Positions 83 to 19,229 of a stretch of DNA of 21,272 nucleotides are shown piece after piece. Position numbers and translations under genes: made by a program. The first letter of the stretch is position 1. Every line of letters starts with the position of its first letter. Origin of the DNA: Bugula neritina (lineage: Eukaryota > Animalia > Bryozoa). Where the stretch lies: assembly GCA_964035545.1 (NCBI GenBank), contig CAXIUT010000001.1:1-21272 (forward strand). The letters are read 5' to 3'. The notes under the pieces were generated by a model. The model was given only the letters and a program-made list of their open reading frames with translations. It was not told the origin of the DNA and ran no database searches.

Positions 83-171
83 TCAGTATGATATTTATAA
101 GGAACATCATTATTGATATGTATCGGTTTATATTTTTTATTTATATACTATTTATAGATAATTTACGAGTA

Positions 172-1161
172 TCAGATCACAACTTTCTACTATTCCGACT
201 CACAACTATCAGAACTAAACCCGCCAATGCCATTATGCTGCTTATTGATTTATTTTTATGTAAACTCATAAAGATATTCATACTGAGAAGCAGTATGAAC
301 CATTCCCCATCTCTGCTCTCTAAACTTCCTCACCTCATTGAAAATTGACACCTTCTCATTAGCACCAATCAACAAACGAATCAATGCCATCATCATAAAA
401 GTTCCTGTTCTTCCCACGCCAGCACTACAGTGAACAATTGGTATCCTATTATCTTTAATATCACCTATAAATGCATCAAGCATGGTATTCATAAGTTTTT
501 TATTGCTTTTTTTAGGAACTTAACCATCAATCCAATCTATCTGCTGAAAATGATGAATAATTTGAGAAGTATTTGTGATATTATTTTTCAACTGCAGTTT
601 TCTGACTTTGACAGTTTTTTTATTATGAAGATCATATTCTTCAAGAAGGGATATTTCATATTACTTTTAGACCATTTTTGATTCGGGAAGAGTATTCTGA
701 GGATAGTAGCGATCACATTTAAGTTTAGTTTTTTACATTATGTTGCTCAACATAAATATCTTGGTCACTTTGTGCTGCTCAATCATTCTCCAAAAATTAT
801 AAAAAGATGTCTTTGATAAAGGAGCCTGAGTAGCGATTGCTGGCTTCCCTCTAATATCGATAAAGTTTGCATTGATATAATTGTCAATGTTCTATTTCTA
901 CTACTCTTTGCCTAGCCTCACTCGAGTTGCTTCAAATGTCATGAATTCAGGGTATCTGTTAAGTTTAAACTGTTCAGGGTGTTTATTTAGTTTATCTACA
1001 TGATGCTGAGTTTGAGTCATAAAGGTAATTAGTTTAAATTAGGTTGACAAGCAACGCTACATTCGTTCTAGACCAAACTAAACAGGAACTATCTACTAGC
1101 TAAGACTCCTCAAGTCTTCGTTTTAGGCCAACCACTGTTGAGATAAATCATTATAGTTCAT
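172..1161 (-). CDS. Classical protein tyrosine phosphatase (329 aa)
   Basis: Uninterrupted ATG..TGA frame when TAA/TAG are sense. Motifs NRYP, YINANFI, IATQAP, FWRMI, KCDRYYP, WIDG, PIVHCSAGVGRTG and QRWGMVHTASQY. Confidence 0.93.
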
Positions 1162-1515
1162 TTTCCCACAAATACAATATTAATTATAGCGAAAAAGGAG
1201 ATAAAAAGTCATATGCTCTTTTATAAATCATAAAATGACCGAATATCTTTTAAAACTTTGATAAATAATAAAACAATATTCTTTTATTGAGAGATAAACT
1301 ACTATTTTCAGTTAATTTTTCAAATGTGAAACAGTTTTTTAAAATATCTTCTTCTTTATACTATCTTTTTAACTAAATAAATCTCTGAAATAATCAAATA
1401 GTTGATTCAAATACTAATATTTGAACTAAATCATCGATATTATTGATTTAACTCTTTGAAAAGTGTCAAATATGAAAGTTAAATAAGGATAAATGCGATT
1501 GATAGATATATTCAA

Positions 1516-2841
1516 TCAAGCTTCTTCTTCTTCAAATTCTCCTTCTTCTTCAGCGGTGGCATCTTGATATTGTTGATATTCTGAAACGAGATCGTTCATG
1601 TTGGATTCAGCTTCAGTGAATTCCATCTCGTCCATACCTTCACCGGTATACCAATGTAAGAAAGCCTTTCTTCTGAACATAGCTGTGAATTGTTCAGCAA
1701 CTCGTTTAAACATCTCTTGGATGGCAGTTGAGTTTCCAATGAAGGTAACAGCCATCTTCAATCCCTTTGGTGGGATATCGCAGATGGATGACTTGATGTT
1801 GTTGGGGATCCATTCAACGAAGTAAGAAGAGTTCTTGTTTTGGACATTCAACATTTGTTCATCAACTTCTTTGGTTGACATTCTTCCTCTGAAAATAGCT
1901 GAGGCAGTAAGATATCTTCCGTGTCTGGGATCAGCAGCACACATCATATTCTTGGCATCGAACATTTGTTGGGTGAGCTCAGGGACAGTCAAAGCTCTGT
2001 ATTGTTGAGATCCTCTTGAGGTAAGAGGAGCAAATCCGATCATGAAGAAGTGCAATCTTGGGAAGGGAATCAAGTTAACAGCCAACTTTCTGAGATCAGA
2101 GTTAAGTTGACCTGGGAATCTAAGGCAGCAAGTAACTCCAGACATAGCAGCGGAGACGAGATGGTTAAGATCACCATAAGTAGGAGTGGTGAGCTTGAGG
2201 GTTCTGAAGCAGATATCATAGAGGGCTTCGTTATCAATAACCATGACCTCATCAGCGTTTTCGACCAATTGATGGACAGATAGGGTGGCGTTGTATGGTT
2301 CAACAACGGTGTCAGAGACCTTAGGAGAAGGCACAACGGAGAAAGTTTCCATGATTCTGTCAGGGTATTCTTCTCTGAGTTTGGAGATGAGGAGAGTTCC
2401 CATTCCTGATCCAGTTCCACCTCCCAATGAGTGGGTGACTTGGAAACCTTGGAGGCAATCACAACCTTCAGCTTCCTTTCTGGCGACATCGAGGACAGAG
2501 TCGATGAGTTCAGCTCCTTCAGTGTAGTGTCCTTTGGCCCAGTTGTTTCCAGCTCCGGTTTGTCCGAAGACGAAGTTGTCAGGTCGGAAAAGTTGTCCGA
2601 AGGGTCCGGCTCTGACGGCATCCATTGTTCCTGGTTCAAGATCCATAAGGACAGCTCTGGGGACGTATCTTCCTCCAGTGGCTTCGTTGTAGTAGACATT
2701 GATCCTCTCGAGTTGAAGATCAGAGTCACCGTGATAGGTACCGGTAGGGTCAATTCCGTGTTCATCAGAGATGACTTCCCAGAATTTGGCACCAATTTGG
2801 TTACCGCATTGACCTCCTTGAATGTGGACGATTTCTCTCAT
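1516..2841 (-). CDS. TUBB: Beta-tubulin (441 aa)
   Basis: [17 protein letters not shown] start, GGGTGSG motif, acidic tail. Intronless, ends in TGA. Confidence 0.99.
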
Positions 2842-3283
2842 AGATTCAAATGTAAAATAAGTTACAAATTCAAACGAAATAAAAACGATTTAACATAGAA
2901 AAAAATCACTCTAATCAGCCGTTTTTCTTATCAATGAAAAAACATTTCTAAACATTTTTTAACACTCATCATTCAATTTAACCCATTTTTCATCTTCTAT
3001 ATTATCAATATCATCATTTATTCGAATAGTTTATCATAAATAAAAATTCAAACTTTAATTCTGGTAAAAAATATTTCTTTTGATAAAAATCGACATAGTT
3101 GAACTTTGATGACTAAATCTCATTGGCTGAAAAGATAAAATAAATATATGTGCTTGATAAAGCATCTTTTATCAAATTTCTCTTATACCAGATATTAAAT
3201 CAATAAAATCAGAAATATAAACTCAATATTCAAAACTTTTCCAATAAACATCTCTATAAAATAACTACAGACTTATCAATTAA

Positions 3284-16575: not shown

Positions 16576-16786
16576 CTCTTTATTAATTATGCAACTTATC
16601 AATATCAATCACTCACTACTATTATTATCCATCTTAAACCAACTTAAATACTATTATCAAATCATCCATCTCTTCTAAGATCAGATTAGTCAAGATAACA
16701 AAGAGATGATGTAAAAGATGATACAGTCAGATAGTATCAGATAGATTGAAATTGATATTGATTATGTTGTCAGATATAGTACCTTA

Positions 16787-16858
16787 TCCACGGTCGTTCA
16801 ATGGTTAGGACATCGGACTCTAAATCCGAGAACCAGGGTTCGATTCCCTGTCGAGGAG
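16787..16858 (+). tRNA. tRNA with anticodon CUA (reads UAG), tRNA-Glu-type body
   Basis: Cloverleaf: acceptor TCCACGG/TCGAGGA, D arm GTTC..GGAC, anticodon arm TCGGA-CT-CTA-AA-TCCGA (anticodon 16820-16822), T arm CAGGG-TTCGATT-CCCTG, discriminator G. Confidence 0.95.
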
Positions 16859-16865
16859 TTTTTTT
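16859..16865 (+). terminator. RNA polymerase III oligo-T terminator
   Basis: T7 run immediately after the tRNA. Confidence 0.8.
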
Positions 16866-16904
16866 ATATTATTATTATCATTTATATCATTCATTTCATA
16901 GATA

Positions 16905-19229
16905 TCATATTTATATGTCATCTTCAATCTGTCGAATAGAACTGCCATCAGTTGACAACCCATCTCCCACCTTAAACAATGGATTAATTATTCGAGGTAT
17001 CTCTCCATCTTTGCCATAAATAGGAAAGTTAATCAAAGAGTCCTAAATAACATCAATAATACCATATTTTGAGGCCAATCAACCGATAAACTATTTTTCT
17101 TAGCATCATTTTTAGGTTTAATAATATAGTCACCAACAATAGCATTAACAATTCCATGCCCACCAGAAGTACCAGGCAACCAAGCAGCAATCACAGCATT
17201 CGACAAACCCAACAACTCATCAATAAGCATAGGTCTCCCAGACAAAAGAACGCTCACTACTGATATTTTTTAATCAACTTCTCTGATAGTATTGATAACT
17301 TCTTTATCATAGGATGATATTTACACTTTAAGACTAGTCAGTTGAACAGCAGGAGCATAAGGATTGATAAAAGGGAAATACAGACATCCCTACTTACCTG
17401 CAGGATGGCATTCAGGAATATTAACATCGCCATCAGATTCAGCATAAGGAAACTATCCAAATGAGCCAATAATAATTGTATTTCTAGAATTCATATTGGC
17501 TCGTTTTGATTTAAGTTGACTTATAAATTTATTTCTCTACTGGTTTATAGCCACAGAATCGATAAAAGTTGAATAATCAGCATAGAGTAATTAAAAGTTA
17601 TTTTATTTTTGTAGATCTTTCAAAGCATCCAAAATAGAAGATGCATTTGTTTTTGTTTTAGCATCTCCTGTCCAAAATTTCATTGCCCTCAGCTCCCTGC
17701 CATCTAACTGACCATCCTCCAGCCTGCATGCCTATGTTGTCAAAACTTCTAAACAAACGAATTGTTGTCAATCTGTTGATATTTATTATCTTCTAGCCGA
17801 CTAATATTACATATTTTATTGATGATTTTAGGTTGCTTGCAGGTAAGAAGTTATTAGTATTTTTAAGCAAAACCAATGATTACTGAACTGCAGTTAGACT
17901 GTCTTGGTATTCATTGCCTGATGATGATCGAGGAAGAGATACCGATTATTCAGGACTAGCAATAGGTTAGTATTTGTTATCACTGTTTTGTTTCTAGACC
18001 AATCCCATCGCCATCTTCACAGCTAGAATTCGAGTAGTAGCTTCAACAAATCTACTTCTAGGAGCAAAACCTTTACTTTGCATCTTTTTACCATGTTCAA
18101 ATATCCTCTGAACAATCGATAAATCAGATACCATAAACATATCAACTCCACTGTTAACCATAGCAGCATAACCTTCCTCCTATTTCTCAAAATGCATAAA
18201 AGTACGAGGAATGGTCCTTGTATTCATCCTAGTCACATCATCGTAATCAGATATCACGAAACCGTTGAATTTAATGTCTTCTCGCAGTAGACCCAATAAA
18301 TACTGACTGTTTATGGCAGATGGAATCCAGTTTATACCACTATATGAGGCCATTACGGATCCAATATTCTATTTTGCACTACCAATATATCCTTGAATGT
18401 TGTGAGGCAAGTAGCTTTTAAAACTCTGAACATTAGCTGTTCCCTAGTTGGTTCCTGACTGAGTAGATCCATCACCGAAAAAGTGTTTTACACTTCCTAA
18501 AATTCCATTGATCTTGTTATTTTTAACATCCTGCAGTCCTCTTGTATAAGCTGCAGCATATTTTTAGATATTTCCATCTTGTCCCATAGTTTCATAGTAT
18601 CTGCCCCACTGAGGATTATGACTCACAGCCACAGTAGGAGCAAAAGCATAATTAAAACCAACTTTCTTCACTCCTTCTTTAGTCCAATATCCCACATTCT
18701 AAAAGTTATCTTCGTTATGAGAACAAGATAACCCAATATTATGAGGAAATAAAATAGTTCCAATCGTATGCTGATCTCCATGAACAGCATCTGTCCCCAA
18801 TAAAAATTTTAACTTGTATTTCGTATTGTCTTTAGTGGTCACTGGGATTCCTTCTTGCACAAATCTGTCAGTAAACTTCTTCCAATTAGTCACGTTGCCC
18901 TTTCTAAAAACATCCATATGTTGCGAATAATCAGCAGTCGATGGTATTCTTGCAAGATTGCCATCTTCTGTAGGAGCAGCATTTCCATTAATAAGAAGAG
19001 AACCTAATTACATTTTGACTGCATCTTCAGGACGAGTCGATTGAGTGTCTTCGTTGGATATAACTTTGAAATCAGCTTGAATCATCTGTCCGATCAGTTG
19101 AGTATCAGTCATAGATTAGGCTATCTTTCTTGATTACTAATAGTACTGACTAAAGATATCAGTTTGAGCATGAACAAGAGTCAGCAGCAGACACAAAATC
19201 ATACAGTTGAGGATGTCAGATATTTTCAT
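16905..19229 (-). CDS. Secreted glycoside hydrolase family 3 beta-glucosidase / glucan exohydrolase
   Basis: Signal peptide, IGQMIQ, GTDAVHG, FPHNIGL, PQWGRYYE, VKHFFGDG, GFVISDY (nucleophile Asp), PYAESDGD and AAWLPGT. 20-nt intron at 17043-17062. One extra base near 17674-17680. Confidence 0.92.

What the first reader, a model, noticed from the sequence alone, without database searches (positions are those of the whole stretch)
171..16907. Every inferred stop codon is followed by T: a UGA-U termination signal
Seen: 15 of 15 gene ends read TGAT (stops with lowest coordinate 172, 1516, 3284, 3787, 4608, 5435, 7298, 7327, 7998, 12056, 13513, 13564, 14351, 15181, 16905). TGAs reached only through frameshift errors in RRP4, TTLL, the spartin-like gene and the C2 gene are followed by A, C or G. 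Known: eukaryotic eRF1 reads a four-base signal and usually prefers a +4 purine. Inference: this UGA-only eRF1 may need UGAU, or TGAT may double as a 3'-end processing motif, since it recurs in the 3' flanks (e.g. 7298-7320).
Basis: partly seen in the sequence, partly recalled or inferred. Interest (0 to 1): 0.75.

Follow-up and report, generated by a model that had tools for sequence, protein, structure and literature searches.

The report
UGA stops followed by U
In this ciliate, whose only stop codon is UGA, about 85% of genes have U as the next base, a much stronger and different bias from the purine that most eukaryotes prefer, but it is a preference and not a rule.

Summary
All 15 listed sites read TGAT on the stated strand. 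My own gene-end caller supports 10 strongly and 5 weakly, and finds no credible non-T gene end in the window.

Across 161 kb of the same ciliate's DNA, T follows 62 of 79 predicted stops (57 of 68 after an unbiased clean-up, 84%). A follows about 15% and C or G at most 2%. The bias sits at +4 only: T is 0.36-0.51 at +5 to +45, 0.51 after intergenic TGA and 0.30-0.36 after out-of-frame TGA in coding sequence.

It is a strong preference, not a requirement.

The most likely cause is selection for the least leaky four-base stop in a UGA-only organism (UAR = Glu code). One result does not fit this cleanly. Stops not followed by T almost always have a TGAT within 13 nt, in any frame (11 of 14 against 12 of 76), so a frame-independent role for TGAT stays open.

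This scan reported the same UGA-U bias on two other pieces of this genome (s1-435079, s1-437855). No RNA data could be found.

The parts
171..174 (-). TGAT ending the protein tyrosine phosphatase gene (frame 172-1227)
   Evidence: Sequence read. Pfam Y_phosphatase on piece 259-519 with E 8.5e-18. Caller score 18.5.
1515..1518 (-). TGAT ending beta-tubulin (1519-2841)
   Evidence: Pfam Tubulin and Tubulin_C. The C-terminus [11 protein letters not shown] is identical to relative L021. Caller score 50.6.
3283..3286 (-). TGAT ending a 210-codon frame (3284-3913); weak gene call
   Evidence: Caller score 7.7 on its own.
3786..3789 (-). TGAT ending the gene at 3787-4509
   Evidence: Caller score 23.7.
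4607..4610 (-). TGAT ending a gene with intron 4926-4945; weak gene call
   Evidence: Caller score 7.6.
5434..5437 (-). TGAT ending a coiled-coil gene, reached through introns 6220-6239, 5606-5625 and 5494-5513
   Evidence: Read by eye. The introns match the strict 20-nt pattern. Path score 23.0. Without the last two introns the frame ends at TGA-A at 5577, which is a false end.
7298..7301 (+). TGAT ending the RRP4-like gene
   Evidence: Path score 23.5 with one base dropped at 6926. Contigs of runs X1 and X2 leave out one base at 6926. TGA-A at 7117 is reached only in the uncorrected frame.
7326..7329 (-). TGAT ending a small membrane-protein frame (7327-7569); weakest gene call
   Evidence: Caller score 4.9. 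The upstream structure is ambiguous.
7997..8000 (-). TGAT ending the multi-intron TTLL-like gene
   Evidence: Path score 38.0.
12056..12059 (+). TGAT ending a 154-codon frame (11597-12058); weak gene call
   Evidence: Caller score 6.2.
13513..13516 (+). TGAT ending the gene at 12197-13515 (intron 13136-13155)
   Evidence: Caller score 18.9.
13563..13566 (-). TGAT ending a 353-codon low-complexity frame (13564-14622); weak by codon score
   Evidence: Not picked by my caller on its own.
14350..14353 (-). TGAT ending the gene at 14351-14866
   Evidence: Caller score 18.3.
15180..15183 (-). TGAT ending the coiled-coil gene at 15181-16584
   Evidence: Caller score 50.8.
16904..16907 (-). TGAT ending the glycoside hydrolase family 3 gene (intron 17043-17062)
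   Evidence: Pfam Glyco_hydro_3_C on piece 17036-17269. Path score 58.9.
16787..16858 (+). tRNA with anticodon CUA, the decoder of UAG as a sense codon; the reason UGA is the only stop left
   Evidence: ARAGORN.

Best explanation
The window is macronuclear DNA of a ciliate that reads UAA and UAG as glutamate and stops only at UGA.

In this organism and its closest relatives, the base after the stop is under selection. U is strongly preferred (about 85%), A is tolerated (about 15%), and C and G are almost excluded.

The likely reason is fidelity of termination:
- UGA is the leakiest stop codon.
- This organism cannot switch to a better stop, so selection can act only on the context.
- UGA-U is the tetranucleotide least read by near-cognate Trp and Cys tRNAs.

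Shown: the bias, its restriction to +4 of real stops, and its conservation in relatives. Inferred: that termination efficiency is the selected trait.
For: Position-specific bias. T is 0.79 at +4 against 0.36-0.51 at +5 to +45. C+G is 0.02 at +4 against about 0.2 elsewhere.

Counts in 161 kb.
- 62 T, 14 A, 1 C, 2 G among 79 predicted stops.
- Binomial p = 4e-7 against intergenic TGA-N (T 0.51), and p = 3e-5 for C+G depletion.
- Clean ends only: 57 T, 10 A, 1 C.
- Out-of-frame TGA inside genes: T 0.30-0.36.
- Annotation-free check: T share rises from 0.42 for all TGA to 0.61-0.66 for TGA closing frames of 200-400 codons or more.

Conservation. Beta-tubulin genes of seven organisms with TAR at Glu positions (the window plus L021, L022, L023, L039, L041, L088) all end TGA-T, while bases from +5 on differ. 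Other genes on those contigs bring the total to 15 T of 20.

Internal control. Beta-tubulins ending in TAA or TAG have a purine at +4 in 33 of 34. Those ending in TGA have T in 29 of 40.

Literature.
- Yeast readthrough order is UGA-C > A > G > U. UGA-A is favoured by Trp-tRNA, UGA-C and UGA-G by Cys-tRNA, and UGA-U by neither (PMC4748822).
- Avoidance of C at +4 is reported in three other UGA-only ciliates (PMC10553269).

The code itself. TAA and TAG occur in frame in genes. A tRNA(CUA) is present. TAR stands at Glu positions in the tubulin tails of relatives.
Against: - No functional data exist. No RNA run was found, and the four runs laid on the window gave only unspliced contigs with no read-end evidence.
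- A pure termination model predicts in-frame back-up stops. Instead, the TGAT that follows non-T stops is frame-blind: 4 in frame, 3 in +1 and 4 in +2.
- In mammalian reporters UGA-A, UGA-G and UGA-U contexts were all strong and only C was weak (PMC5829715). The yeast ranking may therefore not transfer.
- The link to expression level was not tested.
- My gene models are mechanical, and the assembly has homopolymer errors.
Confidence: 0.55

Rival explanations
1. TGAT is a frame-independent element at the end of each gene, and most genes economise by letting it overlap the stop codon. It could be part of an mRNA 3'-end, poly(A) or transcription-termination signal, like the dual-use stop codons of Giardia, Naegleria and Trichomonas. 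It could also be an out-of-frame backstop.
For: - Non-T stops have a TGAT starting within +5 to +15 in 11 of 14 cases, against 12 of 76 for T stops (p = 7.5e-6).
- The frames of that TGAT are 4, 3 and 4 (in frame, +1, +2).
- The pattern is replicated in short-read metagenome contigs of relatives: 4 of 5 against 1 of 14.
- A TGAT therefore lies at or within 13 nt after the end of the reading frame in 69 of 71 genes of this genome.
- Spacers between convergent genes are as short as 18-54 nt, so 3' ends must form very close to stops.
- Dual-use stop codons are known in other compact protist genomes (PMC11529991; PMC6413133).
Against: - TGAT is not enriched in the 3'-proximal 50 nt of T-stop genes compared with other spacer DNA.
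- It occurs 422 times out of frame in the coding sequence of the intron-free models, so it cannot be a sufficient signal.
- No extended motif surrounds it: +5 onward and -1 to -15 are at background.
- There is no excess RNA structure (mean z -0.16).
- No dominant poly(A) signal is known in Tetrahymena.
- The sample of non-T ends is small (14).
Confidence: 0.25
2. The release factor of this lineage has itself changed so that it recognises UGA best, or only well, when U follows. This would be a lineage-specific four-base reading rather than a generic property of UGA.
For: - The ciliate's eRF1 (L101 589-1926, minus strand; Pfam eRF1_2) has a decoding domain that departs from the human one.
- The GTS loop is one residue shorter in a tool alignment: NG-SVVT against NGTSMIS.
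- By eye, NIKS reads QIKD.
- The stop specificity of ciliate-type eRF1 variants depends on context in reporters (PMC3025575).
- The bias looks stronger in the Glu-code group (7 of 7 tubulins) than in Gln-code ciliates (11 T of 17).
Against: - About 15% of genes end UGA-A, so U is not required.
- In solved termination complexes the +4 base stacks on 18S rRNA and is not read by eRF1 side chains (my own knowledge; also discussed in PMC4748822).
- A U preference also appears in spirotrich-type and hymenostome-type beta-tubulins, whose eRF1s differ.
- No eRF1 comparison across ciliates was made here.
Confidence: 0.12
3. There is no signal. The run of T reflects U-rich 3' flanks, the reader's choice of stops, or errors in gene models.
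For: - The flanks are AT-rich, and T follows 51% of intergenic TGA.
- Five of the 15 gene calls are weak.
- The assembly has indel errors.
Against: - The bias is confined to one position.
- It survives an independent caller, an annotation-free ORF test and de-duplication.
- It recurs in relatives from other assemblies.
- Model errors dilute the signal rather than create it, because false ends follow the T-poor coding background.
Confidence: 0.03

Closest known systems
Tetranucleotide termination signals of eukaryotes (stop codon plus +4 base; McCaughan et al. 1995, as cited in PMC4748822 and PMC4967479)
   Same: There is a position-specific bias at the base after the stop, strongest avoidance of C, and an interpretation in terms of termination efficiency.
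   Different: The usual preference is for a purine, and I see it in TAA- and TAG-ending beta-tubulins (33 of 34). Here the preferred base is U, G is almost absent, and the bias is far stronger (about 85% for one base).
UGA-N readthrough rules in yeast (Beznoskova et al. 2016, PMC4748822)
   Same: The ranking C > A > G > U for leakiness predicts U as the best context and C as the worst. A is linked to Trp-tRNA misreading.
   Different: This is a reporter result in an organism with three stop codons. Yeast genes are not reported to end in UGA-U at anything like this rate. G is rarer here than the yeast ranking alone would predict.
Stop-context and tandem-stop observations in UGA-only ciliates (McGowan et al. 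2023, PMC10553269; Fleming and Cavalcanti 2019, PMC6879139; weak 'flanking U' bias in Condylostoma, Swart et al. 2016, PMC4967479)
   Same: The organisms are UGA-only ciliates. C is avoided at +4, and extra UGA codons lie just downstream of genes.
   Different: Those papers report C avoidance and in-frame tandem stops. I found no description there of near-exclusive U. Here the nearby extra TGAT is frame-blind and tied to non-U stops. Two older analyses of Tetrahymena and Paramecium termination contexts (Wuitschick and Karrer 1999; Salim et al. 2008) could not be read.
Dual-use stop codons overlapping the poly(A) signal (Giardia, Spironucleus, Naegleria: PMC11529991; UAAA in Trichomonas: PMC6413133)
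   Same: The genome is compact, 3' regions are very short, and a short motif includes the stop codon. When the stop lacks the motif, the motif appears just downstream.
   Different: No cleavage sites are mapped here. The motif has only 4 bases and is common inside genes. No poly(A) signal of this kind is known in ciliates.

Membership tests
Four-base (stop + N) termination signal | Bias at +4 beyond the composition of the flank | tested here: met
   T is 0.79 at +4 against 0.36-0.51 at +5 to +45. C+G is 0.02 against about 0.2. p = 4e-7 against intergenic TGA-N.
Four-base (stop + N) termination signal | Bias present at real in-frame stops and absent at other TGA triplets | tested here: met
   T share after out-of-frame TGA in coding sequence is 0.30-0.36, antisense 0.42, intergenic 0.51, and after predicted stops 0.79-0.84.
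Four-base (stop + N) termination signal | The +4 base is conserved between orthologues while the rest of the flank diverges | tested here: met
   Seven beta-tubulins of the Glu-code group all end TGA-T, with different bases from +5 on. This is one gene family only.
Four-base (stop + N) termination signal | The +4 base changes termination efficiency or readthrough in this organism | not testable with these tools
   No RNA or ribosome-profiling run was found. Only yeast and mammalian reporter data are available.
Four-base (stop + N) termination signal | Obligatory: every stop carries the fourth base | tested here: not met
   10 of 68 clean ends are TGA-A and 1 is TGA-C. Three of 20 ends in relatives are TGA-A.
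UGA-only ciliate code with UAR = Glu (peritrich-type code) | TAA and TAG in frame in conserved genes, with TGA as the only terminator | tested here: met
   There are 18-24 in-frame TAR codons in the PTP, GH3 and coiled-coil genes. eRF1 and kinase matches across the genome carry TAA and TAG but almost never TGA inside.
UGA-only ciliate code with UAR = Glu (peritrich-type code) | TAR aligns with Glu, not Gln, at conserved positions | tested here: met
   In the tubulin tails of relatives 95-98% identical in protein, TAR stands where the window has GAA or GAG Glu: E**GEFE*EEA against [11 protein letters not shown]. In the window's own genes this is inferred, not aligned.
UGA-only ciliate code with UAR = Glu (peritrich-type code) | Suppressor tRNA for the reassigned codons | tested here: met
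   tRNA with anticodon CUA at 16787-16858. Its Glu identity (note s1-435052) was not tested by me.
Dual-use stop codon / 3'-end signal | When the stop lacks the motif, the motif lies just downstream regardless of frame | tested here: met
   11 of 14 non-T ends against 12 of 76 T ends, with frames 4, 3 and 4.
Dual-use stop codon / 3'-end signal | Motif at a fixed distance upstream of mapped cleavage or poly(A) sites | not testable with these tools
   No RNA runs were found. The laid contigs show no spliced joints and no tails. The metagenome contigs show no poly(A) tails.
Dual-use stop codon / 3'-end signal | Motif specific enough to mark gene ends (rare elsewhere in transcripts) | tested here: not met
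   422 out-of-frame TGAT in the coding sequence of the intron-free models. About 10 per kb in all spacer classes.
In-frame tandem back-up stops of ciliates | Excess of in-frame UGA in the first codons after the stop | tested here: inconclusive
   Downstream TGA counts by frame are 24, 24 and 16 in 61 flanks of 45 nt. The sample is too small.

The most novel reading that the evidence does not exclude
TGAT is not only 'stop plus context'. It is a short frame-independent element that every gene of this ciliate lineage needs at or within about a dozen bases after the end of its reading frame. It could act as a dual-use stop and 3'-end formation signal, or as a catch-all terminator for ribosomes that slip at weak UGA-A stops. 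The +4 U bias would then be a by-product of most genes fusing that element with their stop codon.
Probability: 0.22. Interest if true: 0.7.

Novelty: new variant of a known kind. Interest (0 to 1): 0.5.

Why it matters
Little is known about how termination is kept accurate in organisms left with only the leakiest stop codon. McGowan et al. 2023 say so directly.

A one-base context used by about 85% of genes, opposite in kind to the purine preference of other eukaryotes, gives a clear and testable handle. UGA-N reporters, ribosome profiling or release assays with this eRF1 would show whether the selected trait is competition with near-cognate tRNAs or a changed release factor.

It is also of practical use. 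TGA-T is a good mark for true gene ends when annotating such genomes. TGA followed by A, C or G in mid-gene flags missed introns or assembly indels.

The frame-blind TGAT after non-U stops, if it holds genome-wide, would point to a link between stop codons and 3'-end formation that has not been described in ciliates.

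Tried and rejected
- **Euplotes-style +1 frameshifting at TGA-A.** In RRP4 the frame after TGA-A at 7117 continues in +1. By eye against the human EXOSC2 sequence as I remember it, the change of frame lies at an A6 run near 6926, 190 nt upstream. Short-read contigs of two runs have one A fewer there. This is an assembly error, so the idea is rejected.
- **RNA evidence.** No run on record as RNA holds the stretch. The four runs laid on 3100-9000 gave unspliced contigs with no joints and no read-end evidence. 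Introns, poly(A) sites and expression are therefore unverified.
- **More of the genome.** The tabulation rests on 161 kb and about 79 gene ends.
- **TGAT as a motif recurring in 3' flanks.** The twofold excess over shuffled flanks disappears against real spacer DNA. Part of the ATCA excess is the stop of a convergent neighbour.
- **Hairpin formed by the stop and a downstream ATCA.** There is no excess stability (mean z -0.16).
- **Word search with beta-tubulin to reach annotated model ciliates.** It returned tubulins of all eukaryotes and no usable ciliate genome. The +4 distribution in Tetrahymena, Paramecium and Oxytricha was not measured.
- **Literature.** I found no paper describing a strong UGA-U bias in ciliates. 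Two subscription papers on Tetrahymena and Paramecium termination contexts, and PMC1084231, are not held.
- **NIKS piece of eRF1.** At 24 residues it is too short to match solved structures.
- **Searches of spliced models.** Joined protein models were not sent to any search tool. Pfam and structure searches used single stop-free exon pieces by reference.

Full report
**What the window is.** The window is a whole 21-kb contig (C10) of a 216-Mb assembly. According to earlier notes of this scan, the assembly is mostly a bryozoan with a ciliate living alongside it.
- The contig has 32% G+C. It starts with (CCCAAC)n and carries three internal (GGGGTT)n arrays.
- Long frames are open only if TGA alone is read as stop, and TAA and TAG occur in frame in recognisable genes.
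- Pfam confirms a tyrosine phosphatase, beta-tubulin and a family 3 glycoside hydrolase on stop-free pieces.
- A tRNA with anticodon CUA lies at 16787-16858.
- In beta-tubulin genes of the closest relatives from metagenomes, TAA and TAG stand where this gene has Glu codons. That is the UAR = Glu (peritrich-type) code.

**The observation.** All 15 sites read TGAT on the strand given. I checked the stops with a caller of my own. It sums codon log-odds trained on frames of 300 codons or more, allows 18-24-nt GTA..AG introns (cheapest for the 20-nt form with A at -6), and allows a penalised one-base slip at homopolymers.
- Ten stops sit at the end of paths scoring 15 or more. The 95th percentile of all 1027 TGA ends in the window is 18.4.
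- Five stops are weak by codon score (3284, 4608, 7327, 12056, 13564), but each closes a long TGA-free frame.
- The caller found no credible non-T end in the window.
- TGA-A at 5577 is bypassed by two strict 20-nt introns that lead to TGA-T at 5435.
- TGA-A at 7117 lies in a frame created by one extra A at 6926. Short-read contigs of two independent runs lack that base. The same runs add an A behind 7559, so the assembly has roughly one homopolymer error per 3 kb here.

- An annotation-free test already shows the effect. T follows 42% of all 7181 TGA, but 61-66% of TGA that close frames of 200-400 codons or more.
- With the caller, 79 models of score 10 or more end in T 62, A 14, C 1 and G 2.
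- The position profile shows T at 0.79 at +4 against 0.36-0.51 at every position from +5 to +45. C+G is 0.02 against about 0.2. Nothing stands out at -15 to -1.
- The backgrounds for T after TGA are intergenic 0.51, out of frame in coding sequence 0.30-0.36, and antisense 0.42.
- I then removed ends after which another frame stays open with a positive coding score, a filter blind to the +4 base. That leaves T 57, A 10 and C 1, and one of those A ends is the known false end at 5577.

**Relatives and a control.** A metagenome scan with the beta-tubulin protein gave 80 loci.
- The six loci with TAR at Glu positions all end TGA-T, with diverged flanks. Other genes on those contigs bring the count to 15 T of 20.
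- After correcting four loci where the first TAA or TAG is a sense codon, tubulins ending in TAA or TAG have a purine at +4 in 33 of 34. Those ending in TGA have T in 29 of 40.
- TGA-ending tubulins of Gln-code ciliates, including G4T4-telomere (spirotrich-type) contigs, also mostly have T (11 of 17). A U preference is therefore not confined to this lineage, at least for this highly expressed gene.

**Mechanism.** The best-supported reading is selection on the fourth base for faithful termination.
- In yeast, readthrough of UGA-N runs C > A > G > U. UGA-A is preferred by Trp-tRNA and UGA-C and UGA-G by Cys-tRNA, while UGA-U is preferred by neither (PMC4748822).
- An organism that has given up UAA and UAG cannot improve a weak stop by changing the codon. 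Only the context is left.
- C avoidance at +4 has been reported in three other UGA-only ciliates, with the remark that little is known about ciliate termination (PMC10553269). A weak U bias was noted in Condylostoma (PMC4967479).
- One inference of mine is untested. The abundant UAA-reading tRNA is also near-cognate to UGA through a G-U pair at the middle position, which would add to the pressure.

**The release factor.** The ciliate's eRF1 (locus L101, itself ending TGA-T) has a GTS loop one residue shorter than the human protein in a tool alignment. By eye it has QIKD where NIKS stands. I did not compare it with other ciliates. Because 15% of genes end UGA-A, eRF1 cannot require U.

**What does not fit.** Stops not followed by T nearly always have a TGAT close behind.
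- In this genome 7 of 9 TGA-A ends have one starting at +5 to +13, against 11 of 62 T ends (p = 6e-4).
- In the relatives the counts are 4 of 5 against 1 of 14. Pooled, this is 11 of 14 against 12 of 76 (p = 7.5e-6).
- The frames are 4 in frame, 3 in +1 and 4 in +2. In-frame back-up stops alone do not explain it.
- Assembly indels do not explain it either. The relatives are separate metagenome assemblies (I take them to be short-read), and a frameshifted false stop would not fall so regularly within 13 nt of the true one.
- Against it, TGAT is no commoner just after T stops than in other spacer DNA. It is frequent inside genes, has no extended context and forms no structure.
- A different word, TATC(A), does peak 14-33 nt after stops and is a better candidate for a 3'-end signal.

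**Limits.**
- There is no RNA evidence.
- The gene models are mechanical, and the sample is about 80 gene ends plus 20 in relatives.
- Model ciliate genomes were not tabulated.
- Two older papers on Tetrahymena and Paramecium termination contexts could not be read.
- Joined spliced proteins were not sent to any search tool; only stop-free exon pieces were, by reference.

**Verdict.** It is a new variant of a known kind (stop-codon context bias). This scan had already reported it on two other pieces of the same genome (s1-435079, s1-437855), with estimates that agree with mine.

Noticed in passing
window 1-82, 9690-9763, 10930-11011, 19623-19685; also contigs C11, C14, C15: The contig starts with a C4A2 telomere and carries three internal G4T2 arrays, all in the same orientation and never followed by C4A2. 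Contigs C11, C14 and C15 have the same layout. One run has a telomere joined at 7906, inside the first segment. The contigs look like nested or alternative chromosome ends rather than simple head-to-tail chains.
   Followed up: partly
window 6926 and 7559: These are homopolymer errors of the assembly. Short-read contigs of runs X1 and X2 leave out one base at 6926 (A6 should be A5), which puts RRP4 back in frame. Runs X1, X2 and X7 add an A behind 7559. Other 'frameshifts' in this genome's genes may have the same cause.
   Followed up: yes
3' flanks of genes in C10-C22 (for example window 3766-3770 and 1499-1503, minus strand): TATC, often TATCA, peaks 14-33 nt after stop codons. Of 89 occurrences in 100-nt flanks, 41 fall in the second and third 10-nt bins. 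It is about twice as dense in the first 50 nt of tail-to-head spacers as in the rest. It is a candidate 3'-end signal.
   Followed up: partly
C15, C16, C18, C21 loci (L006-L009, L013, L015, L018) and relatives L021-L023, L088: Stops followed by A, C or G almost always have a TGAT within 13 nt in any reading frame (11 of 14 against 12 of 76 for T stops). Several share the form TGA-AA(A)-TGAT.
   Followed up: partly
L101 589-1926, minus strand (G000 contig C314): This is the ciliate's eRF1. The GTS loop is one residue shorter than in human eRF1. By eye QIKD stands for NIKS and YNCDSRF for YLCDNKF, and the codon at the position of the conserved Glu55 is a TAR codon. The gene ends TGA-T.
   Followed up: partly
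window 7327-7997, minus strand: After adding the read-supported A behind 7559, one frame runs through an in-frame TGA at 7599 that is directly followed by ATG. Removing the strict intron 7517-7536 gives a different join. Coding scores are low on both strands here, so the gene structure is unresolved.
   Followed up: partly
metagenome loci L026-L034, L037, L051, L068, L078: Spirotrich-type beta-tubulins (tail EDEEEMDEEEME, some on contigs with G4T4 telomeres) end TGA-TC in 10 of 11 T-ending cases although the rest of the flank differs. A conserved +5 C is not seen in the window's organism.
   Followed up: no
L010 (G000 contig C6, 1-10000): The first 10 kb of a 16-Mb contig has 57% G+C and no stop codon of any kind in one frame over its whole length. 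A C4A2-type match lies at 7578. It is probably a long simple repeat at a host chromosome end.
   Followed up: no
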